From Haliotis rufescens (Eukaryota): a DNA stretch of 64,000 bases. Shown here piece by piece: positions 4,929 to 63,814 of this stretch. Location: the NCBI RefSeq assembly GCF_023055435.1, contig NW_025964223.1:41044001-41108000 (forward strand), given 5' to 3'. Position 1 is the stretch's first letter. Every line of letters begins with the position of its first letter. The notes under the pieces were generated by a model. The model made no database searches. It was not told the origin of the DNA and worked only from the letters and a program-made list of their open reading frames with translations. The translations under genes were made by a program, and so were the position numbers.

Positions 4929-7900
4929 CTAGGCGTAAATGTATGGATCATCTCCACTGACCGAGTTGACGTACGAAGGTACTTCACTTCTGTTTATGTG
5001 ACCGTAGCTATGTTCGTCACCGTCTTCACTTGCATTACGTTGTATTCCATTGTACATATTTCTTTCAACATCATGGCTGAGGCCAGAATATGTGTTGGTG
5101 GTGCCACTGGTGGGAATAAGGTCATCTTCTCCCTGGGATCCATCAGGGATGCTCTGCACACCATAATAAACTGACGTTTCAGGATTCGATGAATTACCGT
5201 GCGAGTTCCTGGATAGCCTGATTACCATGCTGCAGCAATAGACGTTTTGCATACGATCATTGAATAATAATTACAAGGTTGCATTTTGACTTCATTACCA
5301 AGTGCCATAATATCACACGTATAAATCAAACAGTTTGATGTACTTACATATATATGATGAGCGCCACTATGATGAGAACCAGGACACCACACACCACTGC
5401 TAAGGGTAAAACAATATTTCCATTGTCTGAAACGAGATACATGAAGCCTTTAACGTGAAGATTTCTGCTTTTGTCTGTGCCTTCATTGCACAACTTGGGC
5501 TTACAAACACACGAGCGCGCGCGTGTATACACACACACACACGTGCATGCACACTCTTACACGAAATTATTTCCATATTTCGTATAACAATCTCATTGGT
5601 TACCTGTGTGTGTTGATGACAGGGCTGTAGAGGTAAGGGATGTCATTGTGACGGTTGATCCCTGAGCAGTAGTATAGGTAGTTATTTCAGACAGTGTAGT
5701 GATGCCGTTGGATATCCGTAGCGTTGTGGCTACTGACGTAGTTAGTGAATCTGTATGGGAAATGAAACACAATGAGTGATTTCCTCTGTGGTTAGTATGC
5801 ATGGCCGTCGTAGGGATTCCGGAAGAAAATACATGAGGTTCCCAGAAACCGTCGCTGGTCTCAGGAGGCGATCAAATGAATCGGGGTGATTGTGTATCTA
5901 CGTACCCTGATGGCGTGGATCGTTGCTCACAAATAACAAATTGTCTGGTCCAGTTTCGATTTTTTACAAACCGCCATCGTATATATAGCTGCAATAATAG
6001 TACGGCAAACAAACAAACAGAGACCAAATCAAACTATTTGTCGACCTCTTAACGGAATAGGAACAATAGATAGGGATAGAAGTTGAGTTCTCGTTACTAA
6101 TTCAACATGGGACAAGTCGCCCTGTCATTTCCTTCAGTCAGGCTCTCTGATTACACCTTCTGGAGTTAGGCTGTACTGATGTTCTAGCATATTGTTCAGG
6201 GCAGTCTATGTCAGCTATTGCGTGTTCTAGTGATGAGATACAGACTCAGGGAAATTCAAGGTAATAACACTGCTGCCATAGACCACACTAGTCTTCTCAA
6301 ATGCGTGTCATCACAAATGTTCATACTCATACCCACACAAATATAACGGTAATCCAACTGATCACCGTTGAGAGGGTCATGAAACATCGTCATCAGGTGA
6401 CACTCACCCATAGAAGTCAAAGGTGTACTTGTTGTTGCTGCAGTGGTCAGTGTGTCCAAAGTACTTGGACTGGTTGCATCTTGTGAACGCGATGGCGCCT
6501 GTGTTGGCGTGGGTACTGGGGTGGTTGATGCTTCCAACGGTTGTCGCTCAGAAGTTATGTTCATTTTACCTGAAGCTGTGAACAATCATTTCTGAAGCAG
6601 TCTGTAGGTCCGAGTTCCGTTTGATTTGAAATAAGTGATGCGACTCCCGGACACTGGAGGAAACTAGCTGACCATAGAGTCGTAGGTCGTAGAGTTGTAT
6701 AATATATGATGAAACCTACTGCATACCAGTCAAGTCATAATATTTTCTTAGTATATTATGGAAAGTAGTTAAAAGGGGGTTTATTTTCATCATGGCTACA
6801 CTGTACTTTTCTTTTGATGGAACCAGCAGTTCTCGAGAGGCTGTCACAATTGTATTTTTCAATAAAATAAATTGAACAAATCAGAAACTATGTATTGTCA
6901 GGATAGATTGGTTCATAAAGGAATTTTATCATTAAAGTGATCACACTGGACTGACTGAAGGTAGATTGAAATAATTACATGTTTTCTCGGATAGCGAGTC
7001 AAAAGTCAAATCAAGACCGGCATCAGATTCTATTTGTTAACTTATTGCTAATTTGATGGTTATCATAGAAGGAGACACGTCAAAAGATAAATTTGATGTA
7101 TACTCTCATACATACCAGAAACACGTATCCATACATTTGATCCATTCTGATAATGGTTATCGTAGACTATTACTACTTCGGCAGCTGTTCCCCGTAATAA
7201 CCTGTTGTTTTGGATCAAGTTCACCCTTGTCCAGAGTTGATTCCCGTCACCTGAGATGTTAAGACTCCCTAACTTTATCCGCTGTTCTACCAATGTTACT
7301 TGTATATTCTCCCCTGTGATCCTAACAACACAGCTGCTGTTCACACCGACACTGTTAGGGAAGCCCGGGGAATGTAGGTACACCGACCCGTTTACTGTTG
7401 TGCTGACTGAACTACACATATCCATACTTTCTGAAACACAATGCATATAACAAGTAGAACAACTTACATGCTAGTATTCAAATTAGTGACATATTCTTTC
7501 ATAACAGGTCATATAAAGCAAATTGCTCCCATGTATTCTTGATTTCGTTTTGGCGCCCGGTTGATCAAGGCTGAAGCTGAAACACTCATGAATCGCTGGA
7601 AATGATATAGCATTATTACCAGGGTCACACTAAGGTCATGATGCAGGGGGCACTTGGCATGTAGTTCTAGTCAGTTGGCATGAGCGTCTAGTCAGGCTCT
7701 AGTCAGGCTCTAGTCAGGAGGTTTAATCAGTTTGCAGTATCCTTTGGTTGTTTATTACAAAACATATACTATAATTGATGGCAATGATGGTGAAAGATGT
7801 TATGAAAGCAGTCCAGTATTCGTACGCGCTTGTTGTTTTGTTATGTCATAAATCACAAACAGAAGTCGGTGCAATTAAACGCTTACTAGGTAACAAAATA

Positions 7901-8054
7901 TGGTACTCATACACGTGTAACCTTGACATGTCACGATGTATTTATGAATATTGTAACGAACAACATAATGATAAGAAAGATAGTTTTTTTATGTCAACTT
8001 CTTTATCATGAAGAACACAACATTTTCGGAGTAGATGCTTACTCCTTCATCAGG

Positions 8055-8091
<37 letters not shown>

Positions 8092-11000
8092 TGATGATGA
8101 TGATGAAACTAGAAATGTGATGATGAGAAATAATCAACACAATAGATGCATAAAGCCACAATTAAAAACGTGGCTGATCACGATAAGTTCGATATTGTCC
8201 CATGTGACTTAATGTTCATATCCTAAAAGCCTGACACGATGGATGTTTGAAATGTAATTACATTTTTGCCTCAATCAGTTGTGAAATCGTGATGGTGGCC
8301 TCAAGGAACTACACGCTCACCTCGAGATGTGAAGTCACGGACGACGACGATACAATCCAGACATGCATAACCAACAGTTATCGCATGGTGCATGATACGT
8401 TGAACCGCGATAACACAAGTGTTAATTCTCTGCAGAAAATATACACTTGTTTGTTCCGTTTACTGACTTGCAATACATGTGCGTGTTCTGTATGTCAGTT
8501 AAATATTGTCATGTTCCGATCTCCAAGCAGACACTCCATCCACGAGACCATGGAGGTAGTCCATCATAAGGCTCACCAGTAAGTCTTGCAATGATATCAA
8601 CAGGCTAACATACCATGTTGCAATGACATCAACAAGCTACTTACGATATACACTGGTCTTGTTTGTTGCGTTAGCTTTATTTTTCAAAACATATTTGTGT
8701 GTTGTACGTCTGTTACATATTGTCATGTTGAGATCGAACCACCAATGCAGACGCTCTATCCCTAGACCATGGAGGCAGTCCGTCATAAAGTTCATGAGTC
8801 AGTCTTGAAATGACATTAACTAACATTCTTTACTAGTCTTAATCTATTCCTGCAGTGTCGCATATCAAACTTAAGAATCTATCAGCTGTTTGTTTGTTGT
8901 TTAACGCCGCACTCAGTAATATACACAACGGCGATCCGCGAATACTCTAGTCTGGACCATACAATCCTGTGACTGACATCGTGAGCATCGATCTACGCAA
9001 GTGGGATACGACGACCTACATCAGCCATGTCCGCGAGTCTCAACTCTCTTTCTAGAAGCATTGATTGCTGAAGACCAATTTTAACCCGTATCGTCATGAG
9101 AGCTCTCAATTATAATATACACGTGGGTGAACTGGATTTATCGCCGCCTTAAATAATATTTCAGTTATATCACAGGATATCAGCCTGATGTGATGGGAAA
9201 GCTCGACGTAATAAAGTTCTTGGGATTTTACCACTTTGGTGTAACCCACGAGCACTGGTATGGTACAAAGAACACTAGAAACAATCATAGAAGATCATAG
9301 GTTCAAGGGTTTCTGACACGCGAATTGCAACAGAATCACCCATGACCTCTTATTACAATATATATTTTAAAACTTCAGGCTAGAAGCTGAAAAACTCAAA
9401 TGCACAACATTACCCTAATCTCTCTCCATCTGTTTTCACATGGATAGAGACAGGTAGTATATTTTCCATTTGTATCAACACGTACAAATGTAACGCATAC
9501 ATTCTTCCGATCCTTGCCACGTGTATGGGTGTTAAGGTATTCTACTCCAATAATCACCTTGGGGTAAATACATGTACATGTATGGATGTATTGTGTGATG
9601 TGCTAACAATAGGAAGGATTGCTAAGAACGAAGTGAGATGCTGTGCACGTCCAGATCAAATGTCCATGAATGGCAGACACATAATGTGACATATCAACGA
9701 TTGAAAGACAACAGAATATACCTTCTGTCATGAACGTACCATTTTGTTTTCTTCTAAAACTCACATATGCATTTATGACTACTGGGTTTAATACCTACAA
9801 TCATACATGCGATTTTTATCGAATCAGTAACTCATTATTAAAAGCAAACCATGTTGATTGTGTCAGTTTGACCAGATACTAAATTTACGTCTCACCTTTG
9901 ATACAGGTGTAATTTACTTCAGCAGCAGCATATGTGAAGTTACAGTTTATTTTGGGTGTTGCGGATATGGCTTCATGGCAGGACTGTTTCCCATTACAGT
10001 TGACGATCAGTCCATTTTTGCTGCTGGTATGGCTCTTACTACACGGCTCTGCTGACTCTTACTGCACGACGATTTCAGGCGACATGTCGCATTGTCTCCA
10101 TCCCCATACGCCTCTTGCTCGACATGTATCCATTCACCGGCAGAACACTGAAGCTGTATTGTAAAGGTTCTCCACAACCCCTCTATACATCTGTTCCCAG
10201 TTCTGGTGTCACCTTTGAATGCATTATAACTCGTTTAAATATACTTCGCTGAATAAGATCTAAACGTTTTTACTACAGTCGCAGGCAACTGCCGTGTACC
10301 AAAGCTGTAATGCTGTAATTATCAAATAAAACATTAATGAGAAATCATTATGTGGGAATACACAATATGCAGCTGTTGAGTGGTTTATTAAGAGCTTTCA
10401 TTTCTCAAAAGCAACTAGTTATGTAATATGCTCATAAGTAAATCACACAAGCGAATCCCGTTGTACTTTACATAAGTGATGCATGACAGACATTTCAAAG
10501 TAAGATTCGCCTATTACATTATCCCGTAGAAAATTGTAATGATCTCGAAAGTACATAACCTATCATGAATCCAAGGATCGCATTTGCGCAAATAAAGTAT
10601 TGGCTCGTATCTCTTCATCTAATACTATGAAAGCCTATTGAGGTCAAAATTGAAATATGGAAAAGGACACGAAATGAAATTCGTTATAACGGGAAAAAAG
10701 TTCGTTATGACGGAAATAATTTCGTTATAACGGAAAAAAGATTCGTTATTAAGTAAAAGAATGTTATTACGAAAATGTTTTCGTTATGAAGGAAACAATT
10801 CGTTTTTACGGAAATAATTTCGTTATAACGAACCATTGTTTCGTAATGCCGAATCGTTTTCAGTAATAACGAATTCTTTTTCCGTAATAACGAATTTCTT
10901 TTTGTAATAACGAATCTTGTTTCGTAATAACGAATTTTTTTTTCGCAATAACAAATATATTTTCATAATAACGAATCTTTTTTCCGTTATAACGAAATTA

Positions 11001-11468
11001 TGATCAATTTTGACCCAAATAGGCTTTCGTATAATACATAGTTTGAACTACTTGTATATTCATGCTGTTTGATACCCCTTTCTGTTTCCTAGATACATAG
11101 TACAGCAACACTGGTAAATGTAAATGCTTGTGCGCTGTTAAATTCAGTGACATCCAGGGGGTTGAACATTTGAGCTTTTGTATTGTTGTATACTTGTAAT
11201 TTCAGTCACAACAAATCACAGGTACCAAGATCATATGGCAACCGCTGTCGCAATTTCTGGGTCTTATTCAACGATTCATAAACAAACGAACAGTATTGCG
11301 ACTTTTATAATATTGAAATCTGATGAAAATACACATCGTAGTTGCCAAAATGAACAATGCAACCCATACTCAAGTAAACAAACCAAATGAACGTATATCT
11401 TTTTTTTACTCACCGCATACAGCCAGTAAGAAATAGACGCAAAGCACAAATGCTCTTTCAGCATGCAT
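4929..11468 (-). pseudogene. Receptor copy A: SUEL-lectin/CUB-like/mucin-stalk/TM/Tyr-tail receptor, frameshifted in the lectin exon
   Basis: GT-AG exons: 11468-11414 (signal MHAERAFVLCVYFLLAVCG), 10212-9896 (lectin, 317 nt = 300+17), 7430-7116 (CUB-like), 6575-6408 and 5750-5604 (T/S/P stalk), 5426-5348 (TM), 5229-4929 (tail). A 17-nt insertion at 10054-10070 causes a premature TGA; all other exons are open and in phase. Confidence 0.8.
10626..11031. mobile_element. Foldback MITE with ~27-bp TIRs, internal ~20-bp tandem repeats and a 6-bp TSD
   Basis: Termini tatgaaagcctattgaggtcaaaattga / tcaattttgacccaaataggctttcgta. TAATAC lies on both sides (10620-10625, 11032-11037). The arms are built of ttcgttataacgg units in opposite orientation. 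Absent from intron 1 of B, C and D. Confidence 0.85.
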
Positions 11469-14795: not shown

Positions 14796-14859
14796 GCCAC
14801 CCCCCCCCCCCCCCCCCCCCCCCCCCCAAACCCAAACCTCTGGAGCAATAGCTTGAGTG

Positions 14860-15375
14860 TTGATATTAGATGTTAACATATGGACCATCTTCACTGACAG
14901 TAAACATAGGCAGGCCCTTCACAACTGGTTATACGCCCGTAGCTACATGTATGTTCGTCACCATCGTCACTTGCATCACAATGTATTCCATCGTAGACAT
15001 GTGTCATCATAATGACTGAGGCCAGAGTTGGTGGTGTCACAGGTGGGAATTAGGTCATCTTGTCCTTTTGATCTTTTAGGGATCCTTTGCATATCATGAA
15101 CTGACGTGTAAGTATGTGATGAATTACCGTGCGAGTTTCCCCTGGATAGATTGTTTACCCTGCTGCAGTAATAAACGTTTTACATACCGTAATTAGTTAA
15201 TATTAGTGATATTACCGAAATATTGCTTAAAACGGCATAAAATGATTCTTATTCACTCACTCATATATAACTCGACCAGTTTCATGTACTTGTAGTTTCA
15301 TGATGAGCACCACTATGATGAGACCCAGGACACGACACGCCACTGCTAATGGTAACACAATACGTCTAGTGTCTT
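14860..15375 (-). pseudogene. Relic copy F: TM and tail exons only of the receptor family
   Basis: TM-like DTRRIVLPLAVACRVLGLIIVVLIM (~15372-15295) with the donor site lost. Tail-like RVNNLSRGNSHGNSSHT...QDDLIPT has the first Tyr deleted and a frameshift. No upstream exons are recognisable. Confidence 0.75.
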
Positions 15376-16630: not shown

Positions 16631-17334
16631 ACCTTAAGACAGACTTGCGGCAGTCGTAGCGCTGAGGTTGTTTTGTACAATGGTACCCTGGTCGGCAGGG
16701 AGTGTGAGTGGGTTGTCCATGTTAAGACTGCGGCATGCTATATCTGTTGACTAGCACAAAAAAACCTCGCATTACAAGCAGTCACACGCACTTGCATAAA
16801 CTTGCATAAACGTCCCTATATATATCCCAAAAAATATCGGATGATGAACAAAGATAATTATTGGAATATGAATATTTTATTTCGGAAGGAAAGTAAAAAC
16901 GCATAATCACATATGTTCAAAGCTGAGAGTAATAATGATTCATAACAAAGCAGATAAACTGAATATATTTATCAAAAAATGATGATTGATCAGTTGATAA
17001 ATGAAATATTGTGAAATGTTATGGAATGAGGATATAACTAGAATGTGTATAATATGGAACAAATATGGAACTCCTTTTCAAACTTAAGAGAAATAATTAC
17101 GAAAATAAAGTTTATATGTATACGTTGGCCTTTATAGAAACACTGGTTAGTCTCACGCTGAATATACAGACCACTATTTTGTTTCAAAGATATGTGAAAA
17201 AGCATAACCAGATATGTTCATAGCTTAGAATAATATTAATTCATAACGAAGTAGGTAAACTAAATTTAATTATCAAGCAAGCTGATTGATCAGGTGATAA
17301 ACGAATCTTTGAAAAATGGGGTGGAATGAGGATT

Positions 17335-18756: not shown

Positions 18757-21700
18757 CTAGGCGTTAATGTATGGATCATCTCCACTGACCGAGTTGACGT
18801 AGGAAGGTCCTTCACTTCTGTTTATGTGACCGTAGCTATGCTCTTCACCGTCTTCACTTGCATTACGTTGTATTACATTGTAGATATTTCTTTCAACATC
18901 ATGGCTGAGGCCAGAATATGTTTTGGTGGTTCCACTGGTGGGAATAAGGTCATCTTCTCCCTGGGATCCATTAGGGATGCTCCGCACACCATAATGAACT
19001 GACGTTTCAGTATTAGATGAATTACCGTGCGAGTTCCTGGATAGCTTGTTTACCATGCTGCAGCAATAGACGTTTTGCATACGATCATTGTATAATATTT
19101 ACAAGGTTTCATATTGACTTCATAGCCAAGTGCCATAATATCACACGTATAAATCAAACAGTTTGATGTACTTACATATATATGATCAGCGCCACGATGA
19201 TGAGACCCATGATACCACACACCACTGCTAAGGGTAAAACAATACTTCCATTGTCTGAAACGAGATACATGAAGTCTTTAACGTAAAAATTTCTGCTTTT
19301 GTCTGTGCCTTCATTGCACAACTTTGGCTTACAAACACACGAGTGCGTGCGTGTATACACACACACGTGAATGCACACTCTTAACCGAAATTATTTCCAT
19401 ATTTCGTATAACAATGTCATTGTTTGTCGTTATTACATGTACATATAGATACCCGTGTGTGTTGATGACAGGGGTGTAGAGGTCAGGGATTTCATTGTGT
19501 CGGTTGATCCCGGAGCAGTAGTATAGGTAGTTCTTTCAGACAGTGTAGTGATGCCGTTGGATATCCATAGCGTTGTGGCTATTGACGTAGTTAGTGAATC
19601 TGTATGGGAAATGAAACACAATGAGTGATTTCCTCTGTGGTTAGTATGCATGGCCGTCGTGGGGATTCCTGAAAATAATACATGAGGTTCCCAGAAACCG
19701 TCGCTGGTCTTAAGAGGCGTCCAAATGGATCGGGGTGGTCAGGCTCGGTGACTTGGTTGATTGTGTATCTACGTACCCTGATGGCGTGGATCGTTGCTAA
19801 CAAATAACAATCACTGGATTGTCTGGTCCAGTTTCGATTATTTACAAACCGCCATCGTATAGCTGCAATAATAGTACGGCAAACAAACACATTGAGACCA
19901 AGTCAAACTATTTTCAGTCAGGCTCTCTGATTACACCTTCTGGAGTTGTGCTGTACTGATGTTATAGCATATTGTACAGGACAGTCTATGTAAGCTATTG
20001 CATGTTCAAGTAATTAGATACAGACTCAGGAAAACTCAAGGTAATAACACTGTTGCCATGGACCACACTAGTCTTCTCAAATGCGTGTCATCACAAATGT
20101 TGATACTCATACCCACACAAATATAATGGTAATCCAACTGATCACCGTTGACCAGGGTCATGAATCATCGTCATCAGGTGACACTCACCCATGGATGTCA
20201 AAGGTGTACTTGTTGTTGCTGCAGTGGTCAGTGTGTCCAAAGTACTTGGACTGGTTGTACCTTGTGAACGTGATGGCGCCTGTGGCGTGGGTGATGGGGT
20301 GGTTGATGCTTCCAATGTTTGTCGCCTAGAAGTTATGTTCATTTGACCTGAAGCTGTGAACAATCATTTCTGTAGCAGTCTCTAGGTTCGAGTTCCATGT
20401 TGATCTTTAATAAGTGAGGCAACTTCTGGACACGGGGGAAACTAGCTGACCATAGAGTCGTAGGTCATGTCATTTATTTACTGAGGAACTTGTTACCATA
20501 CAAATAACTGTGAATACAGTATAATATATGTTGAAACCTACTGCATACCAGTCAAGTCATCATATTTTCTTAGTATATTACGGAAGATTGTTAAAAGATG
20601 GTTTCTTTTCATCATGGCTACACTGTACTTTTCTTTTGATGGAACCAGCTGTTCTGGAGGGGCTGTCACAATTGTATTTTTCAATATAATAAATTTAACA
20701 AAACTATGTATATTTTATTGTCAGGATAGATTGGTTCATGAAAGGAATTTTATCATCGAAGTGATCGCACTGGACTAGATTGAAATAATTACGCGTTTTC
20801 TCGGAAAGCGAGGCAAAATTCTAATCAAGACCGGCAGATTCTATTTGTTAATTTATTGATAAATTGATGGTTATCAAATAAGGAGAAACGTCAAAAGATA
20901 AATTTGATGTATACTCTCATACATACCAGAAACACGTATCCATACATCTGACCAAGTCTGATCCTGGTTATCGTAGACTATTACTATTTCGGCAGCTTGT
21001 CCCGGCAACACCCTGTTGTACTCGTCTACTATCACGCTTGTCCATAGTTGTTTCCCGTCACCTGAGATGTTAAGACTCCCTGTCGTTATCCTCTCTTCTA
21101 TCAATATTACTTGTATATCCTGCCCTGTGATCCTAACAACACAGCTGCCGTTCACACCGACACTGCCAGGGAATCCCGGAGTATGGAGGTACACCGACCC
21201 GTTTACTGTTGTTCTGCCATTACCTGAACTACACATATCCATACTACCTGAAACACAATGCATATGACAAGTAGAACAACTTACATGTTAGTATTCAAAT
21301 TAGTGACATATTGTATCATAACAGGTCATATAAAGCAAATTGCTCCCATGTTGCTTGATTTCGTTTTGTCGCCCGGTTGATCAAGGCTGAAGCTGAAACA
21401 CACATGAATCACTGGAAATGGTATAGCATTATTACCAGGGCCACACTGAGGTCATGATGCAGGGGACAGTTGGCATGTAGTTCTAGTCAGTTGGCATGAG
21501 CGTCTAGTCAGGCCCTAGTCAGGAAGTTTAATCAGTTTTCAGTATCCTTTAGGTGGTAATTACAAAACGTATGCTATAATTGATGGCAATTGTGGTGAAA
21601 GATGTTATGAGAGCAGTCAAGTATTCGTACGCGCTTGTTTTTTTGTTATGTCATGAATCGGGAACAGAAGTCGGTGCAATTAAACACTTACTAGGTATCA

Positions 21701-21855: not shown

Positions 21856-21893
<38 letters not shown>

Positions 21894-22004: not shown

Positions 22005-22051
<47 letters not shown>

Positions 22052-25000: not shown

Positions 25001-25186
25001 GCAAACACGTCCGGGAGTGACACTTTTAACATATTGAACTCTGATGAAAATTCAGTAGCCAACACGAACAATCTTGGTACACGAACTGTAGTACACAAAC
25101 CAATGGAAAGTCTATCTGTCTATTTACTCACCGTGTACAGCCAATAAGAAATGCACACAAGCCATAAACACTCTTTCAGTATGCAT
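18757..25186 (-). CDS. Receptor copy B: type I membrane protein (signal, SUEL/Gal-lectin fold, CUB-like, mucin-like stalk, TM, ITAM-like tail), ~455 aa
   Basis: Exons 25186-25132, 24290-23991, 21247-20927, 20353-20189, 19599-19453, 19254-19176, 19057-18757 sum to 1368 nt. All are GT-AG with phases 1,1,1,1,1,2 and no internal stop. Lectin: 8 Cys with CIEG..LQC..WIHV..AYG..CNGKQSC..EVKYNC. CUB-like: C..GSVYLHTPGFP..NGSCVVRI. TM: IVLPLAVVCGIMGLIIVALIIYIMV. Confidence 0.85.
21803..22050. repeat. (ACT)n and (AAT)n microsatellites; orthologous (AAT)n at 8057-8105 and 55548-55594
   Basis: Directly visible. Confidence 0.95.
23040..23207 (+). mobile_element. tRNA-derived SINE, full length
   Basis: A/B boxes (tagcctagtgg, ggttcgattcc), (CACT)n tail, TSD tcag(g/a)ctagaggt. 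Empty site in copy D at ~56515. Confidence 0.9.
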
Positions 25187-25671
25187 AGCTGTTAAATGTC
25201 AGTCATCAGAAGTACACTACATCTTTTCTGTATGTCCGTTGATACACAACAGGTCGACTCTATCCAGGCATTACATGTCGTAAAACGGTTGTGTTCCTAT
25301 TCTGTATGTAGCAAGTCCTCTCTGCGAACGTCCCACACCTTGAATCACAGACAATGTAAACAGCTTCACTTCTGAACACTTCAAACCTATTAGCACGTAA
25401 TCACTCTCCTGGGACATCTTAAATCTGTCATTGTGTCCCCATGAATCTTTCGGGTATACTGGAACATCTAACACCATAGTCTTACACATATCACAAGACA
25501 AATGGTAAACTGAACAAACACAATCAACGAAATGTCATAACCAACACAGCGACAATATGTACAAACCTCACAAGGTAGCTTAGAGCTATTGATAGCATAA
25601 TGCATTAATAAAACGTCCCTGGTGGCCCACGAACAGGGAAGTTGACTGCAAACATGTGTGTTTAATGTGGC

Positions 25672-28900: not shown

Positions 28901-29089
28901 GATGGGTTTACTGGAAAATGTATAATATGGAAAATGGAACATATATTCAACGTTAAGAGAAATAAATAACAAAATAAGGTTTATTTGTTATACTTTATAT
29001 GTACATATTCGCCTTTATAAAGAAGACTGGCTGATCTCAAAGTGACTATAGAGCTACAAGAGTCTAAAGCACAAGCTTGTGTGCTGTCT

Positions 29090-33355: not shown

Positions 33356-33441
<86 letters not shown>

Positions 33442-38731: not shown

Positions 38732-38765
<34 letters not shown>

Positions 38766-47606: not shown

Positions 47607-48173
47607 NNNNNNNNNNNNNNNNNNNNNNNNNNNNNNNNNNNNNNNNNNNNNNNNNNNNNNNNNNNNNNNNNNNNNNNNNNNNNNNNNNNNNNNNNNNNNN
47701 NNNNNNNNNNNNNNNNNNNNNNNNNNNNNNNNNNNNNNNNNNNNNNNNNNNNNNNNNNNNNNNNNNNNNNNNNNNNNNNNNNNNNNNNNNNNNNNNNNNN
47801 NNNNNNNNNNNNNNNNNNNNNNNNNNNNNNNNNNNNNNNNNNNNNNNNNNNNNNNNNNNNNNNNNNNNNNNNNNCACTACTACTACTTCTACTANNNNNN
47901 NNNNNNNNNNNNNNNNNNNNNNNNNNNNNNNNNNNNNNNNNNNNNNNNNNNNNNNNNNNNNNNNNNNNNNNNNNNNNNNNNNNNNNNNNNNNNNNNNNNN
48001 NNNNNNNNNNNNNNNNNNNNNNNNNNNNNNNNNNNNNNNNNNNNNNNNNNNNNNNNNNNNNNNNNNNNNNNNNNNNNNNNNNNNNNNNNNNNNNNNNNNN
48101 NNNNNNNNNNNNNNNNNNNNNNNNNNNNNNNNNNNNNNNNNNNNNNNNNNNNNNNNNNNNNNNNNNNNNNNNN
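47607..48173. other. Assembly gaps (47607-47874, 47895-48173); other gaps at 1413-1555 and 35430-35649
   Basis: Runs of N. Confidence 1.
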
Positions 48174-52481: not shown

Positions 52482-55400
52482 CTAGGCGTTAATGTATGGA
52501 TCATCTCCACTGACCGAGTTGACGTAGGAAGGCCCTTCACTTCTGTTTATGTGACCGTAGCTATGCTCGTCACCGTCTTCACTTGCATTACGTTGTATTA
52601 CATTGTAGATATTTCTTTCAACATCATGGCTGAGGCCAGAATATGTGTTGGTGGTGCCACTGGTGGGAATATGGTCATCTTCTCCCTGGGATCTATTAGG
52701 GATGCTCTGCACACAATAACGAACTGACGTTTCAGGATTAGATGAATTACCGTGCGAGGTCCTGGATAGCTTGTTTACCATGCTGCAGCAATAGACGTTT
52801 TGCATATGATCATTGTATAATATTTACAAGGTTGCATATTGACTTCATAGCCAAGTGCCATAATATCACACGTATAAATCAAACAGTTTGATGTACTTAC
52901 ATATATATGATCAGCGGCACGATGACGAGACCCATGATACCACACACCACTGCTAAGGGTAAAACAATACTTCCATTGTCTGAAACGAGATACATGAAGT
53001 CATTAACGTGAAGATTTCTGCTTTTGTCTGTGCCATCATTGCACAACTTTGGCTTACAAACATACGAGCGCGTGTGTGTATACACACACACGTGCATGCA
53101 CACTCTTAACCGAAATTATTTCAATATTTCGTATAGCAATGTCATTGGTTGTCGTTATTACATGTACATATAGATACCTGTGTGTGTTGATGACAGGGCT
53201 GTAGAGGTCAGGGATTTCATTGTGTCGGTTGATCCCGGAGCAGTAGTATAGGTAGTTCTTTCAGACAGTGTAGTGATGCCGTTGGATATCCGTAGCGTTG
53301 TCGCTATTGATGTAGTTAGTGAATCTGTATGGTAAATGAAACACAATGAGTGATTTCCTCTGTGGTTAGTATGCATAGCCGTCGTAGGGATTCCGGAAAG
53401 GAATACACGAGGTTCCCAGAAACCGTGGCTGGTCTTAAGAGGCGTCCAAATGGATCGGGGTGGTTAGGCCCGGTGACTTGGTTGATTGTGTATCTACGTA
53501 CCCTGATGGCGTGGATCGTTGCTCACAAATAACAATCACTGGATTGTCTGGTCCAGTTTCGATCACTTACAAACCGCCATCGTATAGCTGCAATAATAGT
53601 GCTTCAAACAAACACACACAGAGCAAATGAAACTATTTTTTCGACCTCTTACAAAACAGGAACAATAGATAGGGATAGAAGTCCAGCTCTCGTCACTAAT
53701 TAAACATGGGACAAGTCATTTCATTCATTCAGGCTCTCTGATCACACCTTCTGGAGTAGTGCTGTAATGATGTTTTAACGTATTCTACAGGACAGTGTGT
53801 GTAAGCTATTACATGTTCTAGTAATTAGAAACAGACAAAAAAAACTCAAGGTAATAAGACTGTTGCCATCGGCCACATTAGTCTTCTCAAATGCGTGTCA
53901 TCATAAATGTTCATACTCATACCCACACAAATATAATGGCTATCCAACTGATCACCGTTGAGCAGGGTCATGAAACATCGTCATCAGGTGACACTCACCC
54001 ATAGATGTCAAAGGTGTACTTGTTGTTGTGGCTGCAGTGGTCAGTGTGTCCAAAGTACTTGGACTTGTTGTACCTTGTGAACGTGATGGCGCCTGTGGCG
54101 TGGGTACTGGGGTGGTTGATGCATCCAATGGTTGTCGCCTGGAAGTTATGTTCATTTGGCCTGAAGCTGTGAACAAAAATTTGTGTAGCAGTCTCTAGGT
54201 CCGAGTTCCATGTTGATTTGAAATAAGTGATGCGACTTCTGGACACGGGGGAAACTAGCTGACCATAGAGTCGTAGGTCATTTATTTACTGAGGAACTTG
54301 TTACCATACAAATAACTGTGAATACAGTCCAATATATGTTGAAACCTACTGCACGCCAGTGAATTCATCATATTTTCTTAGTATATTACGGAAAATTGTT
54401 AAAAGATGGTTTCTCTTCATTATGGCTACACTGTACTTTTCTTTTGATGGAACCAGCAGTTCTGGAGAGGATGTCACTATTGTATTTTTCAATATAATAC
54501 ATTGAACAAATCAGAAACTATGTATGTTTTATTGTCAGAATAGATTGGTTCATGAAAGGAACTTTACCATTAAATTGATGGCACTGGACTGACTGAAGGT
54601 AGATTGAAATAATTACATGTTTTCTCGGAAAGCGTGGCAAAATTCAAATCAAGACCGGCGTCAGATTCTATTTGTAAATTTATTGATCAATTGATGGTTA
54701 TCATATAAGGAGACACGTCAAAAGATAAAATTGATTTATACACTCATACATACCATCAACACGTATCCATACATATGACCCATTCTGATCATGGTTGTCG
54801 TAGACTATTACTATTTCGGCAGCTGTTCCCGGCAACACCCTGTTGTATTGGTCCAAGTTGAAGCTTATCCAGAGTTGTTTCCCGTCACCTGAGATAATAA
54901 GCAACCCTGCCTTCATCCGCTCGTCTACCAATGTTACTCGTAAATTCTGCCCTGTGATCCTAACAACACAGCTGCCGTTCACACCGACACTGCTAGGGAA
55001 GCCAGGGGAATGGAGGTACACCGACCCGTTTACTGACAGTGTTGTGCTGACTGAACCACAGATATCCATACTACCTGAAACACAATGCATATTACAAGTA
55101 GAACAACTTATAAGTTGGGATTGAAATAAGTGACATATTGTATCATAACAGGTCACATCAAGCAAATTGCTCCCATGTATTCTTGATTTTGTTTTGACGC
55201 ACGGTTGATCAAGGCTGAAATGAAGCTGAAACTCAAGAACAATCACTCATGAATCACTGGAAATGGTGTAGCATTATTACCAAGGTGACACTAAGGTCAT
55301 GATGCAGGGGACAGTTGACAGTTGTAGTTCTAGTCAGTTGGCATGAGCGTCTAGTCATGCCCTAGTCAGGAGGTTTAATCAGTTTGCAGTATCCTTTGGG

Positions 55401-55547: not shown

Positions 55548-55594
<47 letters not shown>

Positions 55595-58366
55595 CTGTGT
55601 AAGTTTCTGTAAAGTGATGCCTGTTACCACATTTGTATCTCATACGTACATGTAACTATGGAAGAAACTAGAATTGTGATGATGCGAAATAATCAACACA
55701 CGATAAGTTCGATATTGTCCCATGTGATCACTTAATTTTTATATCCTAAAAGCCTGACACGATGGATGTTTTAAATATAATTACATTTTTGCCTCAATCA
55801 GTTGTGAAATCGTGGTGGTAGCCTCAAGGAACTACACGCTCACCTCCAGATGTGAAGTCATGGACGACGTTTTCGATCCGATACAATCCAGACATGCATA
55901 ACCAGTAACAGTTAAAATTATCGCATCGTGCTTGATACGTTGAACCGCGAATCCTTGATAACACAGGTGTTAATTCTCTACAGAAAATATACACTTGTTT
56001 GTTCCGTTTACTGACTTGCAATACATGTGCGTGTTCTGTATGTCAGTTACATGTCGTCATGTTCCGATCTCCAAGCAGACACTCCATCCACGAGACCATG
56101 GAGCTAGTCCATCATAAGGCTCATCAGTAAGTCTTGCAATGACATCAACAGGCTAACATACCATGTTAGTCTTACATTATTCCTGCAGTGTCTCGCAGCA
56201 AAATTAACAAGTTATCAGATGTATGTTTGTTTGTTGTTTAACGCCGCACCCAAGATCAGCAATATTATATTTAAATGACGGCGAACTGCAAATAGTTTGG
56301 GACAGACAATCCAATGATTTACATCGTAAGAATCGGACAATGCAATTGAGATACGATGGCCTAAAATCAACCAAGTCACTGATTTGTAAGCCTGGCCACT
56401 TGATCCTGTTAGTCACCGCTTAATTGCTGAAGACCAATTCTAATGATGATAGGTTCTTAGGATGCGACTGGATCAACCGTATGCCCCTATTATAATATGA
56501 TATATTATAAGACATCAGGCTAGAGGTTGCCAAAACAACAATGCACGTCATCACCCTTATATGTCGTTATACGTTTACGCACTATGATTAATCTTATATT
56601 AATCTCACTTACACTCTGTCGCATCAGACTGTATAATAGAGCCAAGTAGTATTTTTTTCTGATTTTAATCAAACCTAAATGTAACACATATATTTGTAAA
56701 ATATGTTGACAAAAATATTTTTGTGCATTATGCCAAAGCATGGTGTGCGCAGGAATGCACTGTATCCGATAATCTGGAAACGCTAAATAATGTTCCAGCT
56801 TTACAACATCCTGTACATTACGGAATCTTGATCGGGCAAACCAGTGCACGATAACACGAGCAACGTGCCAAGATGTAGAGTAGGATGACAGTTTGTTAGA
56901 CAGAACAACACTTTGTAACCATCCTATCATTGCGATTTGTATGGGTGTTAGTGTGTTCTACTCCAGGAACCACCATGCAGGAAAATACATGCTTCAATGA
57001 ATGTATTGTGCGATGTGCAGACAATAACAAGACTTGCATTTATGCATTTATGACTATTGGGTTTATATCTAAAATCATGCATGTGGGTTTAATTGAATCA
57101 GAAAGTGATATTACTGAAAACAACGCATGTTGATTGCGTCGAGCAAGAACTAAACGAAGTGTCACCTATGATACAGCTGTAGTTTACTTCAGCAGCATCT
57201 GTGAAGTTACAGTTTGTTTGGGGTGTTGCGGACATGACTTCACGGCACGACTGTTTCCCATTACAGTTGACGATCAGGCCAGTTTGGCTGCTGTTGTGAA
57301 CCTTACTACACGACTCTGTTGATTTCAGACGACATGTCGCGGCGTCTCCATCCCCATACGCCTCTTGCTCGACATGTATCCATTCACCGGCAGAACACTG
57401 AAGCTGTATTGTGAAGGTTCCCCACAACCCCTCTATACATCTGTTCCCAGTTCTGGTGTCACCTTTGAATATAAAGTAACTCGTTCACTGTCAAATATAC
57501 TTCTCTAAATATTATCGAAAGGTTTTTACGTCAGCCTCAGGTACATACCACATTGAAACAAAAATGCTAGCGGCAATCAACATTGATCTGGAAGTGACAG
57601 GTGCATGAATGTAGTTATGACAATTGTCAATGTAATACTGTGTGTCGAAAATGAGACACTACAGAGGAAATCATGATGTTTGATTATGTAACTGTTGAGT
57701 CGTTCATTATCGCATTCCATTTATCACTAGACATTACGTGTATTTATGTATTTTGCTGACAACTAAATTATACAAACGAATCCCGTGACATTTTACATAA
57801 GTGGTGTCATGACTGACATTTCTTCATCTTAGTCTGATATAGGCTATTGAATCAATATTGTAGTAATGGTCTCAAATCTATCAGAAATTGTATTGCGTAA
57901 ATAAAATTATTGATGCGAATTTCAATATCTGATAGACTGTTTTGAGATACATGTAACTTTATGCTGTTTGATACCACCTTATGTTTCCTTGACAAATCGT
58001 CTAGCAACACTAGAAAGTGTAAATGCATGTGCGCTGTTACATTCAGTGACATCAGGGGAGTTGAACATTTAAGCTGTTGTGTTTTTGCATGTGTGTACTT
58101 TTAGTCACAACAAATCACAAGTACCAAGATCAAATGTCAACCATTGTCGCAATTTCCCGATTTCACTCAAAGATTAGTAAGCAAACACGTCCGGGAGTGA
58201 CACTTTTAACATATTGAACTCTGATGAAAATGCAGTTGCCAACACGAACAATCTTGGTACACGTACTGAAGTTCACAAACCAATGGAAAGTCTATCTGCC
58301 TATTTACTCACCGTGTGCAGCCAATAAGAAATACACAGAAGCCATAAACACTCTTTCAGTATGCAT
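52482..58366 (-). CDS. Receptor copy D: paralogue (or allele) of B, ~455 aa
   Basis: Exons 58366-58312, 57462-57166, 55074-54754, 54166-53999, 53324-53178, 52979-52901, 52782-52482 sum to 1368 nt, open and in phase. Introns are collinear with B. Confidence 0.85.
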
Positions 58367-60482: not shown

Positions 60483-63400
60483 TTATTTGTTATACTTTAT
60501 ATGTACATATTCCCCCTTATAAAGAAGACTGGCTGATCTCAAAGTGATTATAGAGCTACAAGAGCCTAAAGCACAAGCTTGTGTGCTGTCTCTAGGTGTT
60601 AACATATGGACCAACTCCACTTCCAGAGTTAACATAGGAAGGTTCTTGTCTACTGGTAATGCGACCGTAGCTATGTTCGTCACCATCGTCACTGGCATTA
60701 CGTTGCATTCCATCGTAGACATTCGTCTCATTGTAATGGCTGAGGCCAGAATATGTGTTGGTGGTGCCACTGGTGCCACTGATGGGAGTAAGGTCATTTG
60801 TCCCTGGGATCCACTGGGGATGGTTTGCATACCAAGATGAGTTGACGTTTCAGTATAATTAGATGTGTCACCGTGCATATCCGTCCTGGATAGCTTGTTT
60901 ACCATGCTGCAGGGACAAACGTTTAGTGTACTGTTATTGTATAATTTTCACTATCATAAGGTTATATTTTGACTTCTCTCGAAGTGTCATATAGTTTCTC
61001 ATGAAACAGTTACTTACATATATATGATGAGCGCCATGCCCACTATGATGAGAACCAGGACACCACACACCACTGCTAAGGGTAACACAATACTTCCATT
61101 GTCTGAAACGGAATACGTGAAGACTTTAACTTGAAGATTTATACTGGTCTCTCTGCGTTACATGCGCAACACGGACTTACACGCACACTTACTCACAATT
61201 ATTTTAATATTTCTCGTAAAACAATGTCATTGGTTGCCGTTATTGCATGTACATATAGATAGCTGTGTCAGAGAATCATATAACCAGTTTCAAGGCCTGT
61301 TATTTATATGTTCATAGAACGTCAGATCAAACACGAACAATTAAAAAACTAGGGACATAACTGGTTGGATGCGAAATTGTTGTTTGTTGTTTCAAGCCGT
61401 ATTACGCCGTATTTCACTCTGTCAGCTATATGACGGCGGTCTGTAAATAATCGAGTCTGGACCAGATAGCCCAGTGATTGACATCATGCGTATCAATTCA
61501 CGCTATTGGGATACGATGTCATGCATCAACCAAGTCAGCGAGCCTGACCACTCCATCCCGTTAGTCGCCTCTTACGACAAACATAGTCGCCTTTTACTAA
61601 AGCATGGAAGTACTATAAACAACTGTATTATCAGAAATATACACGCATCTATTCTAGAGTTCTAGATTCAATAACAGATGTGATGATAAACACAAGTAAA
61701 GATGTATTAGAATTATATATAGACATAACGCATGAAGAGGATGTAACAGATATTCAGGTATGCAAAGTGGAAAGGCTCCAGGCTTCAGTGGTATAGCTAT
61801 AGAATTCTTTAAATATGCACCAAAGGTATGCATATCCAAAATAGTGGTCATTTGGGGGTTAATTTGCCTCTTCACAAGAAAGGTGTTGTTAATAAACCTG
61901 AGAACTATAGGCCAATAACCTTGTTAGAAGTATCAAAGTTTGTATTTCTTGCTATGAAAATGCGATGTAAACAACTAAGTTTACTGTAAAGAGCAAAATG
62001 GCGCTATTACGAAACAAACATCAATGTATCATCAATGCATGTCATCACAAATGACATACTCATACCCACATTCAGTCAGGCTCTCTGATCAGACCTTCTG
62101 GAGAAGTGCTGTACTGATGTTTTAACGTATTCTACAGGACAGTCTATTTAAACTATTACATGTTCTAGTAATTAGATACAGACAGGAAAACTCAAGGTAA
62201 TAACACTGTTGCCATCGACCATACTAGTCTTCTCAAATGCGTGTCATCACAAACGTTCATACTCATACCCACACAAATATAATGATAATCAAACTGAACA
62301 CCGTTGACCGGGGTCATGAAACATCGTCATCAAGTGACACTCACCTTGTGTACCTTGTGGACCTTGTGGACCTTGTGTACTTTGTGTACCTTGTGGACCT
62401 TGTGAACGTGATGGCGCCTGTGTTGGCGTGGGTGAAGGGGTGGTTGATGCATCCCATGTTTGTCTCTTGAAAGTTATGTTCATTTGACCTGAAGCTGTGA
62501 ACAATCATTTCTGTTCATACTCATGCAGGTAATGACACCACAATAATATGTTAAATTATATTATTCTTGCATGTTCATATATGTTCTAGTAATTAGATAT
62601 CAGTATGAAAACTCAAGGAAATAACACTGTAGCCAGTAACCACACTTGTCAAATTCATGTTATCACAAACGTTCATACTCATACCCACATAAATATAATG
62701 GTAATCCAACTGATCACCGTTGACCAGGGTCATGAAACATCGTTATCAGGTGACGCTCACCCATAGAAGTCAAAGGCGTAGTTGCTGTTGCTGCAGTGAT
62801 CGTCAGTGTGTCCAAAGTACTCGGTCTGGTTGTACCTTGTGAACGTGATGGCTGCTGTGTTGGCGTGGGTGATAGGGTGGTTGATACATCCAATGTTTGT
62901 CGCCTAGAAGTTATGTTCATTTGACCTGAAGCTGTGAACAATCATTTCTGTAGCAGTCTCTAGGTTCGAGTTCCATATTGATCTTAAAAAGGTGATGCGA
63001 CTCCTGGGCATTGGGGGAAAGTAGATGACCATTGGGCCGTAGGTAATTTAATCAGTTTTTGAGGAACTTGTTACCATACGATGAACTGTGAATACAGTAA
63101 AATATATGCTGAAACCTAATCCATACCAGTCACGTCAAATGTCATCAAATTAGATGTTTGTGGCTTCACTGCACCTTTCTTTTGATTGAACCAACATGTC
63201 TGGAGAGGCGGTCGCAATTGTATTTTTCAATATAATACATTGAACAAATCAGAAGCTTTATTTATTTTACTGTCAGGATAGATTGGTTCATGAAAGGAAC
63301 TTCATCAATAAAAGGGATCACACTAGACTGACTGAAGGTAGATTGTAATAATTATATATATTTTCTCGGAAAGCGAGGCAAAATTCAATTCACGATCGGC

Positions 63401-63814
63401 ATCAGATTCGATTTGCTAATTGATTGATAAATTGATAGTTATCAATCAGGAGACACGTCAAAAGATAAATTTGATTTATAACCTCACACATACCATCAAC
63501 ACATATCCATAGATTTGCACCAGCCTGATCATGGTTGTCATAGACTATTACTACTTCTGCAGCTGTTCCAGGTAATACCCTGTTGTATTGGGACACGTAC
63601 ACGCTTTCCCAGAGTTGTTTCCCGTCACCTGAGATGTTAACTAGCCCTTGTCTCATCCGCTCTTCTACCAATGTTACTCGTATACCCATTCCTTTGATCC
63701 TGACAGCACAGCGTCTGTTCACAGCGACACTGTTAGGGTAGCTCGGGGAATTGAGGTACAAGGACGCCCCTACTGTTGTTCTGACAGTACCTAAACTACA
63801 CATATTCATACTAC
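60483..63814 (-). CDS. Receptor copy E (5' end beyond window): paralogue of C with a duplicated stalk exon and a frameshifted tail
   Basis: Exons 63814-63494 (CUB-like), 62931-62761 and 62494-62345 (two stalk-1 copies), 61102-61018 (TM, +6 nt in frame), 60906-60483 (tail). A 1-nt deletion near 60798 relative to C shifts the tail frame. May be a pseudogene. Confidence 0.7.
61660..62020 (+). mobile_element. Non-LTR RT fragment, duplicate in copy E
   Basis: Collinear with 30200-30560 (GKAPGFSGIAIEFFK, KPENYRPITLL). Confidence 0.8.

What the first reader, a model, noticed from the sequence alone, without database searches (positions are those of the whole stretch)
4929..63814. Tandem cluster of diversifying lectin-CUB-mucin-TM receptors with tyrosine-motif tails: candidate invertebrate immune or allorecognition locus
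Seen: five copies plus one relic of a 6-7-exon gene that splice in frame to signal + 8-Cys SUEL-fold + CUB-like + T/S/P stalk + TM + multi-Tyr tail, with B, C and D intact. Established: SUEL/RBL and CUB domains are extracellular recognition modules, and clustered polymorphic single-pass receptors underlie Hydractinia Alr allorecognition and the Biomphalaria resistance (PTC/GRC) loci. Inference: I do not recognise this domain combination as a named family. Its birth-and-death pattern (duplication, chimerism, exon gain and loss, pseudogenes) is what recognition-receptor clusters show.
Basis: partly seen in the sequence, partly recalled or inferred. Interest (0 to 1): 0.9.

Follow-up and report, generated by a model that had tools for sequence, protein, structure and literature searches.

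The report
Abalone lectin-CUB membrane receptor gene array
The window holds five head-to-tail copies of an abalone-only gene for a cell-surface protein with a lectin domain, a CUB domain, a mucin stalk and a tyrosine-rich tail; the family is real, fast-evolving and unstudied, but nothing yet shows what it does.

Summary
The window is red abalone (Haliotis rufescens), scaffold C445, 41.044-41.108 Mb. On the minus strand lie five tandem copies and one tail relic of a 6-7-exon gene. All junctions are GT-AG and in frame. B and D (453 aa) and C (409 aa) are intact. A has a 17-nt frameshifting insertion in the lectin exon. E has a 1-nt deletion in its tail, and its first exons lie beyond the window. 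The assembly gaps are intergenic. Exon 2 is a divergent 8-Cys SUEL/rhamnose-binding-lectin domain. Exon 3 is a clear CUB fold (Z 11.5). The genome holds at least 27 copies in three clusters. Relatives with this architecture were found only in four Haliotis species, all unnamed predictions; no paper describes them. Copies evolve by birth-and-death with mosaic exchange. dN/dS is 0.5-1.0 yet frames stay open, so evolution is fast, but diversifying selection is not shown. An immune role is plausible and untested, and allorecognition is unlikely. No RNA data could be obtained. Both RefSeq protein models found for this cluster join exons of neighbouring copies, which raises the possibility of inter-copy splicing. 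The scan had noted parts of this same window before.

The parts
25340..25417 (-). Copy B upstream exon 'e0', used as first coding exon in RefSeq model P0060
   Evidence: Exact match to P0060 residues 1-26, with a GT donor in phase 1. It is open only in B, so it is probably a 5'UTR exon.
25132..25186 (-). Copy B exon 1: signal peptide
   Evidence: ATG, hydrophobic core and GTGAGT donor in phase 1; conserved in A, C and D.
23991..24290 (-). Copy B exon 2: SUEL/RBL-type lectin domain, 8 Cys
   Evidence: Pfam PF02140 E 7e-6 over 1-80/80. Fold hits are all SUEL domains.
20927..21247 (-). Copy B exon 3: CUB domain
   Evidence: AF2 pLDDT 86.5. Top PDB matches are CUB domains: Z 11.5, rmsd 2.1 A, 98 of 106 residues.
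20189..20347 (-). Copy B exon 4: S/T/P stalk 1
   Evidence: Phase 1-1, GT-AG. Stalk is 56% S+T+P.
19453..19599 (-). Copy B exon 5: S/T stalk 2
   Evidence: Phase 1-1, GT-AG.
19176..19254 (-). Copy B exon 6: transmembrane helix
   Evidence: Kyte-Doolittle 19-residue maximum of 3.0; GTAAGT donor in phase 2.
18757..19057 (-). Copy B exon 7: cytoplasmic tail with 6 Tyr
   Evidence: Tyrosine motifs YSGL-x8-YNVI, YGHI, YVNS and YINA.
14851..15374 (-). Relic of TM and tail exons between B and A
   Evidence: 75-80% identical to B e6/e7, with several frameshifts and stops.
11414..11468 (-). Copy A exon 1: signal peptide
9896..10212 (-). Copy A exon 2: SUEL exon broken by a 17-nt insertion (about 10056-10072)
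   Evidence: Alignment to B e2. The genome search splits it into two pieces.
7116..7430 (-). Copy A exon 3: CUB
   Evidence: exact match in RefSeq P0060.
6408..6569 (-). Copy A exon 4: stalk
5604..5750 (-). Copy A exon 5: stalk
5348..5426 (-). Copy A exon 6: TM
4929..5229 (-). Copy A exon 7: tail
   Evidence: 100% identical to P0060 residues 364-462.
34383..34437 (-). Copy C exon 1: signal peptide
33054..33353 (-). Copy C exon 2: SUEL
   Evidence: The acceptor is preceded by a (TA)42 run at 33356-33439.
31406..31726 (-). Copy C exon 3: CUB
30674..30832 (-). Copy C exon 4: stalk (no exon 5; a 21-nt remnant at 29778-29798)
29516..29594 (-). Copy C exon 6: TM
29090..29405 (-). Copy C exon 7: tail, divergent subtype (YSGL-x8-YDGM)
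58312..58366 (-). Copy D exon 1: signal peptide
57166..57462 (-). Copy D exon 2: SUEL
54754..55074 (-). Copy D exon 3: CUB
53999..54160 (-). Copy D exon 4: stalk
53178..53324 (-). Copy D exon 5: stalk
52901..52979 (-). Copy D exon 6: TM
52482..52782 (-). Copy D exon 7: tail
63494..63814 (-). Copy E exon 3: CUB (exons 1-2 lie beyond the window end)
   Evidence: E's SUEL exon is at G000:C445:41109230-41109520.
62761..62925 (-). Copy E stalk exon 4a
62345..62488 (-). Copy E stalk exon 4b: duplicated exon with a 9-nt QGP/QGT repeat
61018..61102 (-). Copy E exon 6: TM with 6 extra nt
60483..60906 (-). Copy E exon 7: tail with a 1-nt deletion; the frame shifts and all Tyr motifs are lost
   Evidence: Alignment to C e7.
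35430..35649 (.). Assembly gap, intergenic (C-D spacer)
   Evidence: 993 bp from the nearest exon.
47607..48173 (.). Two assembly gaps, intergenic (C-D spacer)
   Evidence: more than 4 kb from D's last exon.

Best explanation
The window is part of a roughly 215-kb head-to-tail array in red abalone. The array belongs to a Haliotis-restricted multigene family of type I membrane glycoproteins.

Each gene is built from phase-compatible, one-domain-per-exon modules: a signal peptide, a divergent SUEL/rhamnose-binding-lectin domain, a divergent CUB domain, one or two O-glycosylatable S/T/P stalk exons, a transmembrane helix, and a roughly 100-aa acidic tail with five conserved tyrosine motifs (YxxL/I and YxN).

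Most likely mechanism (inferred):
- The SUEL-CUB head, held away from the membrane on the mucin stalk, binds an extracellular glycan or protein ligand.
- Engagement leads to phosphorylation of the tail tyrosines and recruitment of SH2 proteins (Syk/Shark-type for the ITAM-like pair, Grb2/Drk-type for YxN).

The array evolves by birth-and-death with patchwise exchange between copies. Amino-acid replacement is fast while open frames are kept.

My odds:
- Real, coding, membrane-receptor family: about 0.85.
- Signals through tail tyrosines: about 0.5.
- Its job is recognition of microbes or other non-self in immunity: about 0.35.
For: Shown:
- Gene models have canonical junctions, and B, C and D are intact.
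- All 19 lectin exons tested hit Pfam SUEL over the full model (best E 2e-7). One H. rubra homologue passes the curated cut-off (34.4 vs 31.4 bits).
- An unbiased fold search puts eight SUEL-type domains at the top (Z 6.0-6.7), followed by a drop.
- The exon-3 model (pLDDT 86.5) matches only CUB domains at the top (Z 11.5, rmsd 2.1-2.3 A over 98-100 of 106 residues).
- The exon-3 profile retrieves tolloid-like, cubilin-like and DMBT1-like CUB proteins.
- The TM helix scores 3.0 on a Kyte-Doolittle 19-residue window, and the stalk is 56% S/T/P.
- Four tail tyrosines are kept in every sequence of this tail type in the four-species alignment.
- The genome holds at least 27 CUB exons, 24 lectin exons, and 11 intact plus at least 7 decayed tail exons.
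- Under neutral drift along the exon-3 tree, 18.7 of 20 copies should carry a stop codon; 1 does.
- dN/dS is 0.5-1.0.
- Identity profiles are mosaic.
- Species-interleaved and species-specific clades are both present.

From established knowledge: SUEL domains bind sugars or proteins (latrophilin-teneurin), and CUB domains mediate extracellular protein binding. YxxL/I pairs and YxN are SH2 docking motifs.
Against: - I obtained no transcript evidence. The only runs holding the stretch are DNA.
- No protein identical to B, C or D came back from two family searches, so RefSeq probably does not call them as separate genes.
- The window copies score below Pfam's SUEL cut-off (19-27 bits).
- The sugar-binding YGR and DPC motifs defined for rhamnose-binding lectins (PMC3269628) are replaced by YGD/YGN and TNC, so sugar binding is doubtful.
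- Pfam's CUB model does not hit exon 3, the second CUB disulfide is absent, and the middle acidic residue of the Ca2+ site appears to be missing.
- The lectin-domain model has low confidence (pLDDT 61).
- dN/dS never significantly exceeds 1.
- The tail motifs are also plain YxxPhi sorting signals, and in copy C the second ITAM tyrosine reads YDGM.
Confidence: 0.6

Rival explanations
1. The proteins are endocytic or scavenger-type, or adhesive, mucin-like surface glycoproteins. The head captures cargo or mediates adhesion. The tail tyrosines act as YxxPhi sorting signals for AP-2, not as phosphotyrosine signalling motifs.
For: YSGL, YNVI and YGHI all fit YxxPhi. CUB plus lectin modules are typical of cargo receptors such as cubilin and DMBT1, which the exon-3 profile retrieves. 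The stalk is long and mucin-like.
Against: The acidic context and the two conserved YxN motifs at the C-terminus look more like kinase-substrate and SH2 sites. Related clusters carry repeated END-x-Y-D-G-G and YANS motifs, which is unusual for sorting signals. Rapid paralogue turnover is not typical of housekeeping cargo receptors.
Confidence: 0.2
2. The proteins act in reproduction, as gamete-surface or egg-coat-associated recognition proteins. Like abalone lysin and VERL, they would evolve quickly and be genus-specific.
For: SUEL was first found as an egg lectin, and spermadhesins are CUB domains (PDB hits 1sfp and 1spp). The family is restricted to Haliotis and evolves fast.
Against: There are no expression data. 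A TM helix plus a signalling-type tail and more than 27 copies are unlike the known abalone fertilisation proteins. dN/dS is not above 1.
Confidence: 0.12
3. The window's copies are mostly dead or silent remnants of an array whose working members lie elsewhere. B, C and D would be only recently inactivated, or never transcribed as units.
For: A, E and the relic are broken. Neither RefSeq protein model found for this cluster corresponds to a single copy. No RNA-derived fragment was found. C's exon-2 acceptor is preceded by (TA)42 instead of a pyrimidine tract.
Against: B, C and D keep seven or six exons, all splice sites and full open frames. The neutral simulation shows that frames are maintained across the family. 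Each copy has a polyA hexamer 105-535 nt after its stop codon.
Confidence: 0.1
4. The locus is an allorecognition locus like Hydractinia Alr.
For: It is a cluster of single-pass receptors with variable heads, which is only an analogy.
Against: Abalone are solitary and have no known tissue-fusion or rejection biology (my own knowledge). The domains are unrelated to Alr (Ig-like). Polymorphism could not be measured here.
Confidence: 0.02

Closest known systems
SUEL / rhamnose-binding lectin domains (sea urchin SUEL and SUL-I, fish CSL3, latrophilin and LAT-1 Lec domains)
   Same: Both are domains of about 95 aa with eight cysteines in the same spacing. Pfam PF02140 matches end to end. The best fold matches are these domains. 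The domain is encoded by a single exon, as in Hydractinia rhamnospondin (PMC3269628).
   Different: The YGR and DPC sugar-binding motifs are not kept. The window copies score below Pfam's cut-off. The domain is fused to CUB, a stalk, a TM helix and a Tyr tail, which none of these relatives has.
CUB-domain single-pass receptors with tyrosine tails (CDCP1, DCBLD2/ESDN, neuropilins)
   Same: All have a CUB fold in the ectodomain of a type I membrane protein. CDCP1 and DCBLD2 also have a tail rich in phosphorylatable tyrosines. Neuropilin a1 is among the best structural matches.
   Different: There is no sequence-level orthology. Only one CUB is present, it has a single disulfide, and it is preceded by a lectin domain. 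The family is genus-specific and highly multiplied.
Invertebrate multigene recognition-receptor clusters (Biomphalaria FREPs and the PTC/GRC region, sea urchin 185/333, Hydractinia Alr)
   Same: All are tandem clusters with birth-and-death turnover, mosaic exchange, fast-evolving heads and lineage restriction.
   Different: The domains are different. No polymorphism, expression or challenge data exist for this family. This is a resemblance in genome dynamics only.
ITAM and hemITAM immunoreceptors (Draper, Dectin-1/CLEC-2, FcR gamma)
   Same: Copies A, B and D carry YxxL-x8-YxxI, plus a second possible pair with x12 spacing. The motifs sit in an acidic tail on a lectin-type receptor.
   Different: In copy C the second motif is YDGM. 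Short-tail relatives in H. rubra and H. asinina lack the first tyrosine. No phosphorylation or Syk binding has been shown.
Clustered protocadherin / UGT1A-type loci (comparison for the novel reading only)
   Same: RefSeq models join 5' exons of one tandem unit to 3' exons of a unit downstream. In cluster 2, one ectodomain is joined to either of two TM/tail cassettes.
   Different: Every unit here has its own complete set of exons and its own polyA hexamer. The RNA support behind those models could not be inspected.

Membership tests
SUEL / rhamnose-binding lectin domain (PF02140) | Eight half-cystines in conserved spacing within about 95 aa | tested here: met
   C8, C22, C43, C51, C66, C72, C84 and C97 are present in the window copies. 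C84 shifts or is lost in a few genomic copies elsewhere (L041-L043, L047-L048).
SUEL / rhamnose-binding lectin domain (PF02140) | Score at or above Pfam's curated cut-off (31.4 bits) | tested here: inconclusive
   Window copies score 21-27 bits (E 1e-5 to 4e-4) over 1-80/80. All 19 copies match. The H. rubra homologue P0001 scores 34.4 bits.
SUEL / rhamnose-binding lectin domain (PF02140) | SUEL fold | tested here: met
   The Foldseek top 13 and the wide VIA top 8 are SUEL-type domains (Z 6.0-6.7, 77-89 residues aligned). However, the model's pLDDT is only 61.
SUEL / rhamnose-binding lectin domain (PF02140) | YGR and DPC-x-GT-x-KYL carbohydrate-binding motifs (PMC3269628) | tested here: not met
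   The copies read YGD or YGN and TNC...VKY. Lectin activity is therefore doubtful.
CUB domain (PF00431) | CUB beta-sandwich fold of about 110 aa | tested here: met
   Z 11.5, rmsd 2.1-2.3 A, 98-100 of 106 residues aligned. All top 50 chains are CUB domains. Foldseek E is 6e-5.
CUB domain (PF00431) | Match to the Pfam CUB model | tested here: not met
   No CUB hit at E up to 1. A profile of the family does retrieve bona fide multi-CUB proteins.
CUB domain (PF00431) | Two disulfides (four Cys) | tested here: not met
   Only C5 and C35 are present. The second pair is absent, as it is in the CUB repeats of P0007 and P0015.
ITAM-bearing immunoreceptors | YxxL/I-x6-8-YxxL/I in the cytoplasmic tail | tested here: inconclusive
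   Met in A, B and D (YSGL-x8-YN[VG]I). Not met in C (YDGM). The first Tyr is absent in H. rubra and H. asinina short tails.
ITAM-bearing immunoreceptors | Tyrosine phosphorylation and tandem-SH2 kinase recruitment | not testable with these tools
   This needs biochemistry.
Polymorphic recognition loci (Alr, PTC/GRC type) | High between-individual polymorphism concentrated in the ectodomain | tested here: inconclusive
   Four DNA runs differ from the window by about 3-4.4% in exons and introns alike. Most listed differences are shared by all four runs, so they are probably fixed differences of another taxon or population.
Polymorphic recognition loci (Alr, PTC/GRC type) | Positive (diversifying) selection, dN/dS above 1 | tested here: not met
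   Exon 3 gives 0.82 overall, loops 0.87 (0.56-1.31) and strands 0.76. Exon 2 gives 0.57-0.98. Site models could not be run.

The most novel reading that the evidence does not exclude
The array may work as a combinatorial unit rather than as independent genes. All extracellular exons are phase 1-1, so read-through transcripts could splice a recognition module of one copy to the CUB, stalk, TM or tail modules of a copy downstream. In the sister cluster, one ectodomain is joined to either of two TM/tail cassettes. This would give a repertoire of receptors with mixed heads and alternative signalling tails from about 27 units.

The lead comes from RefSeq models. P0060 joins B's exon 2 to A's exons 3-7, an intron of about 16.6 kb. 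P0057 uses exons 1-6 of one copy and the tail exon of the next copy 22 kb downstream, although its own tail exon is intact. H. rubra LOC124264670 has 20 isoforms that mix three lectin, two CUB and three tail versions.
Probability: 0.2. Interest if true: 0.8.

Novelty: new variant of a known kind. Interest (0 to 1): 0.55.

Why it matters
Abalone are farmed and endangered animals hit by bacterial, rickettsial and herpesviral disease, and their surface receptors for non-self are poorly known. This is a large, genus-specific, fast-turning-over family with a domain combination not described elsewhere (SUEL lectin, CUB, mucin stalk, tyrosine tail). It is a concrete candidate set for such receptors and gives copy-specific targets for expression, association and binding studies. 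If the inter-copy and alternative-tail splicing suggested by the RefSeq models is real, it would be a new way for an invertebrate to diversify or tune receptors. It would be directly testable with long-read RNA. It is also a warning that automatic annotation mis-joins and mis-names these genes.

Tried and rejected
RNA evidence:
- The look-up of sequencing runs returned no RNA holder.
- The four runs laid with read laying turned out to be DNA contigs covering introns, so splicing and expression stay untested.

Spliced models:
- The joined spliced models of B, C and D were not sent to any search or folding tool. Exons were searched by reference.
- Whole-protein questions used the RefSeq paralogues P0057 and P0060.

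Searches that found nothing:
- A search of the 5.8-billion-protein set with exon 3 alone.
- Literature searches on the domain combination, the LOC identifiers and the RefSeq names gave no paper on the family. A 'mucin-22-like' entry in a Pacific abalone haemocyte protein list (PMC11250055) cannot be tied to this family.
- Pfam gave no CUB hit.
- The ESM Atlas gave only sub-threshold CUB and SUEL leads.

Readings rejected:
- That copy A is a unique C/B recombinant. Its junction near 8634-8658 is shared collinearly with the copies at 41.037, 41.168 and 40.98 Mb.
- That exon-3 divergence between B and D shows exon-limited selection. It extends into the flanking intron.

N gaps were not filled or looked up.
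Full report
**Where the window is.** The RefSeq protein P0060 is named 'putative GPI-anchored protein pfl2 [Haliotis rufescens]'. It matches six window exons residue for residue. Its scaffold length of 63,335,689 bases equals that of contig C445 of the window's own assembly. The window is therefore red abalone, G000:C445:41,044,001-41,108,000.

**Checking the observation.**
- Direct-repeat and blastn analysis show five collinear units plus a short relic. All coding sense is on the minus strand.
- I read every exon boundary from the sequence.
- Copy B has seven exons, with GT-AG at all six introns. It gives a 1362-nt ORF of 453 aa.
- Copy D has the same structure and length.
- Copy C lacks the second stalk exon, of which a 21-nt remnant survives. 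It is intact at 409 aa.
- Copy A has a 17-nt insertion in the lectin exon that shifts the frame.
- Copy E runs off the window. Its lectin exon lies about 1.2 kb beyond the window end. It has a duplicated stalk exon, 6 extra nt in the TM exon, and a 1-nt deletion that destroys the tail frame.
- The relic at 15374-14851 is a decayed TM and tail pair.
- Exons 2-5 are all phase 1-1, and the TM/tail junction is phase 2. Each exon corresponds to one protein module.
- The assembly gaps all sit in the 18-kb C-D spacer, at least 993 bp from any exon. No model depends on them. I did not try to fill them.

**The domains.**
- Exon 2 has eight conserved cysteines. In all 19 genomic copies tested it matches Pfam SUEL_Lectin end to end (E down to 2e-7), though below the curated cut-off. 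One H. rubra homologue passes the cut-off.
- Its AlphaFold model has low confidence (pLDDT 61). Even so, Foldseek's top 13 hits are latrophilin/LAT-1 Lec domains, SUL-I and CSL3. An unbiased search of 48,161 chains puts eight SUEL-type domains first (Z 6.0-6.7), followed by a drop.
- The YGR and DPC motifs that define sugar-binding rhamnose-binding lectins (PMC3269628) are not kept. The domain may bind protein, as the latrophilin Lec domain does.
- Exon 3 has no Pfam hit. A profile of the five copies retrieves tolloid-like, cubilin-like, CSMD-like and DMBT1-like multi-CUB proteins.
- Its model (pLDDT 86.5) matches only CUB domains at the top: Z 11.5, rmsd 2.1-2.3 A, 98-100 of 106 residues. It has only the first CUB disulfide.
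- The stalk is 56% S/T/P. The TM segment is strongly hydrophobic.
- The 100-aa tail carries YSGL-x8-YN[VG]I, YGHI, YVNS and YINA. The last four tyrosines are kept in every sequence of this tail type in the four-species alignment.

**How large and how old the family is.**
- The genome has at least 27 CUB-exon matches and 24 lectin-exon matches, in three clusters.
- Cluster 1 is C445 40.977-41.193 Mb, with about 13 units including the window.
- Cluster 2 is C445 47.16-47.38 Mb, with 8 units.
- Cluster 3 is C423 2.67-2.78 Mb, with 6 divergent units.
- The window's tail type is confined to cluster 1: 11 intact tail exons and at least 7 relics.
- In 1.84 billion representative proteins and in the 5.8-billion set, the only proteins with this architecture are predicted, unnamed proteins of H. 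rufescens, H. cracherodii, H. rubra and H. asinina. There is one weak partial relative in Gigantopelta.
- A CUB-domain tree shows one old paralogue lineage shared by all four species. It also shows rufescens/cracherodii copies interleaved, rubra/asinina copies grouped together, and recent rufescens-only pairs such as C/E, B/40.977, D/40.991 and A/41.034.
- No paper describes the family.

**How it evolves.**
- Pairwise Nei-Gojobori dN/dS is about 0.8 for the CUB exon within cluster 1, 0.57-0.98 for the lectin exon, and 0.54-1.25 for the tail.
- CUB loops are more variable than strands (entropy test, p = 0.008). Their dN/dS is 0.87 (bootstrap 0.56-1.31) against 0.76 for strands.
- Positive selection is therefore not demonstrated.
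- The exons are clearly not drifting freely either. A neutral simulation along the exon-3 tree expects 18.7 of 20 copies to carry a stop codon, and one does.
- Identity profiles are mosaic. B and D are 96-98% identical at the 3' end but 87-89% identical over about 1.1 kb around exon 3, including intron.
- The family has two deeply diverged 5'-half types that meet at a sharp boundary near 8634-8658 in copy A. The copies at 41.037, 41.168 and 40.98 Mb share A's type.
- This is birth-and-death evolution with patchwise exchange.

**Expression.** I could get no RNA evidence. The four runs that hold the stretch are DNA contigs spanning introns. No RNA-derived fragments were found.

**An unexpected lead from the annotation.**
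- Two family searches returned only two RefSeq proteins of the window's type in red abalone. Neither corresponds to a single copy.
- P0060 is made of an upstream exon of B (25417-25340), B's lectin exon, and A's exons 3-7.
- P0057 is made of exons 1-6 of the copy at 41.1615-41.169 Mb and the tail exon of the next copy 22 kb downstream. It skips its own tail exon, which the genome search found complete and without stops.
- In H. rubra, 20 isoforms of one locus mix three lectin, two CUB and three tail versions.
- In cluster 2, each ectodomain is joined, exactly at the TM-exon boundary, to either of two unrelated TM/tail types.
- Because the exons are phase-compatible, all such joins stay in frame.
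- These models may reflect real read-through and alternative splicing. They may instead come from misplacing reads or protein alignments among paralogues. I cannot tell which.

**Verdict.**
- The immune role is only a reasonable guess, and allorecognition is unlikely.
- 'Diversifying' should read 'fast-evolving with maintained frames'.
- This is a new variant of a known kind: a lineage-specific lectin-domain single-pass receptor array.

Noticed in passing
G000:C445:47.16-47.38 Mb (loci L009, L015, L037, L040): In the sister cluster, RefSeq isoforms share an identical ectodomain and stalk (first 310-320 aa). They then switch, exactly at the TM-exon boundary, to one of two unrelated TM/tail types: one with YANS/EDSY repeats, the other with END-x-Y-D-G-G and LYxxF repeats. 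Each gene has its own version of both types.
   Followed up: partly
G000:C423:2.67-2.78 Mb (L021, L023-L027): A third, divergent cluster of six CUB exons. Only one has a detectable lectin exon. The RefSeq protein P0016 (860 aa) maps here.
   Followed up: no
window 33356-33439: A (TA)42 microsatellite abuts the acceptor of copy C's lectin exon, in place of a pyrimidine tract. It may weaken splicing of an otherwise intact copy.
   Followed up: no
window 62343-62404: Copy E's duplicated stalk exon contains a 9-nt tandem repeat coding QGP/QGT units (collagen-like in appearance). No other copy has it.
   Followed up: no
window 29920-30103 and 32496-32863: Intron segments of copy C recruit enormous contig depth (up to millions) in four DNA runs. 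They are very high-copy repeats of the abalone genome.
   Followed up: no
window 17273-18025 and 51511-52307: Paired ORF fragments downstream of B and D belong to the duplicated unit. They look like a decayed Tc1/mariner-type transposase N-terminus (my recollection), but Pfam gave no hit.
   Followed up: partly
window 10671-10998: An array of 20-nt units in both orientations (a palindromic tandem repeat) lies inside intron 1 of copy A.
   Followed up: no
P0001 (H. rubra 'mucin-22-like isoform X1', 958 aa): This protein contains two CUB stretches that fall in different clades of the tree. The model probably fuses two neighbouring genes.
   Followed up: partly
window 29000-34500, runs X1-X4: Four DNA runs labelled as another organism differ from the window by about 3-4.4%, and most listed variants are shared by all four. 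Coverage of intron 2 differs between individuals (present in X1 and X4, nearly absent in X2 and X3), hinting at structural variation.
   Followed up: no
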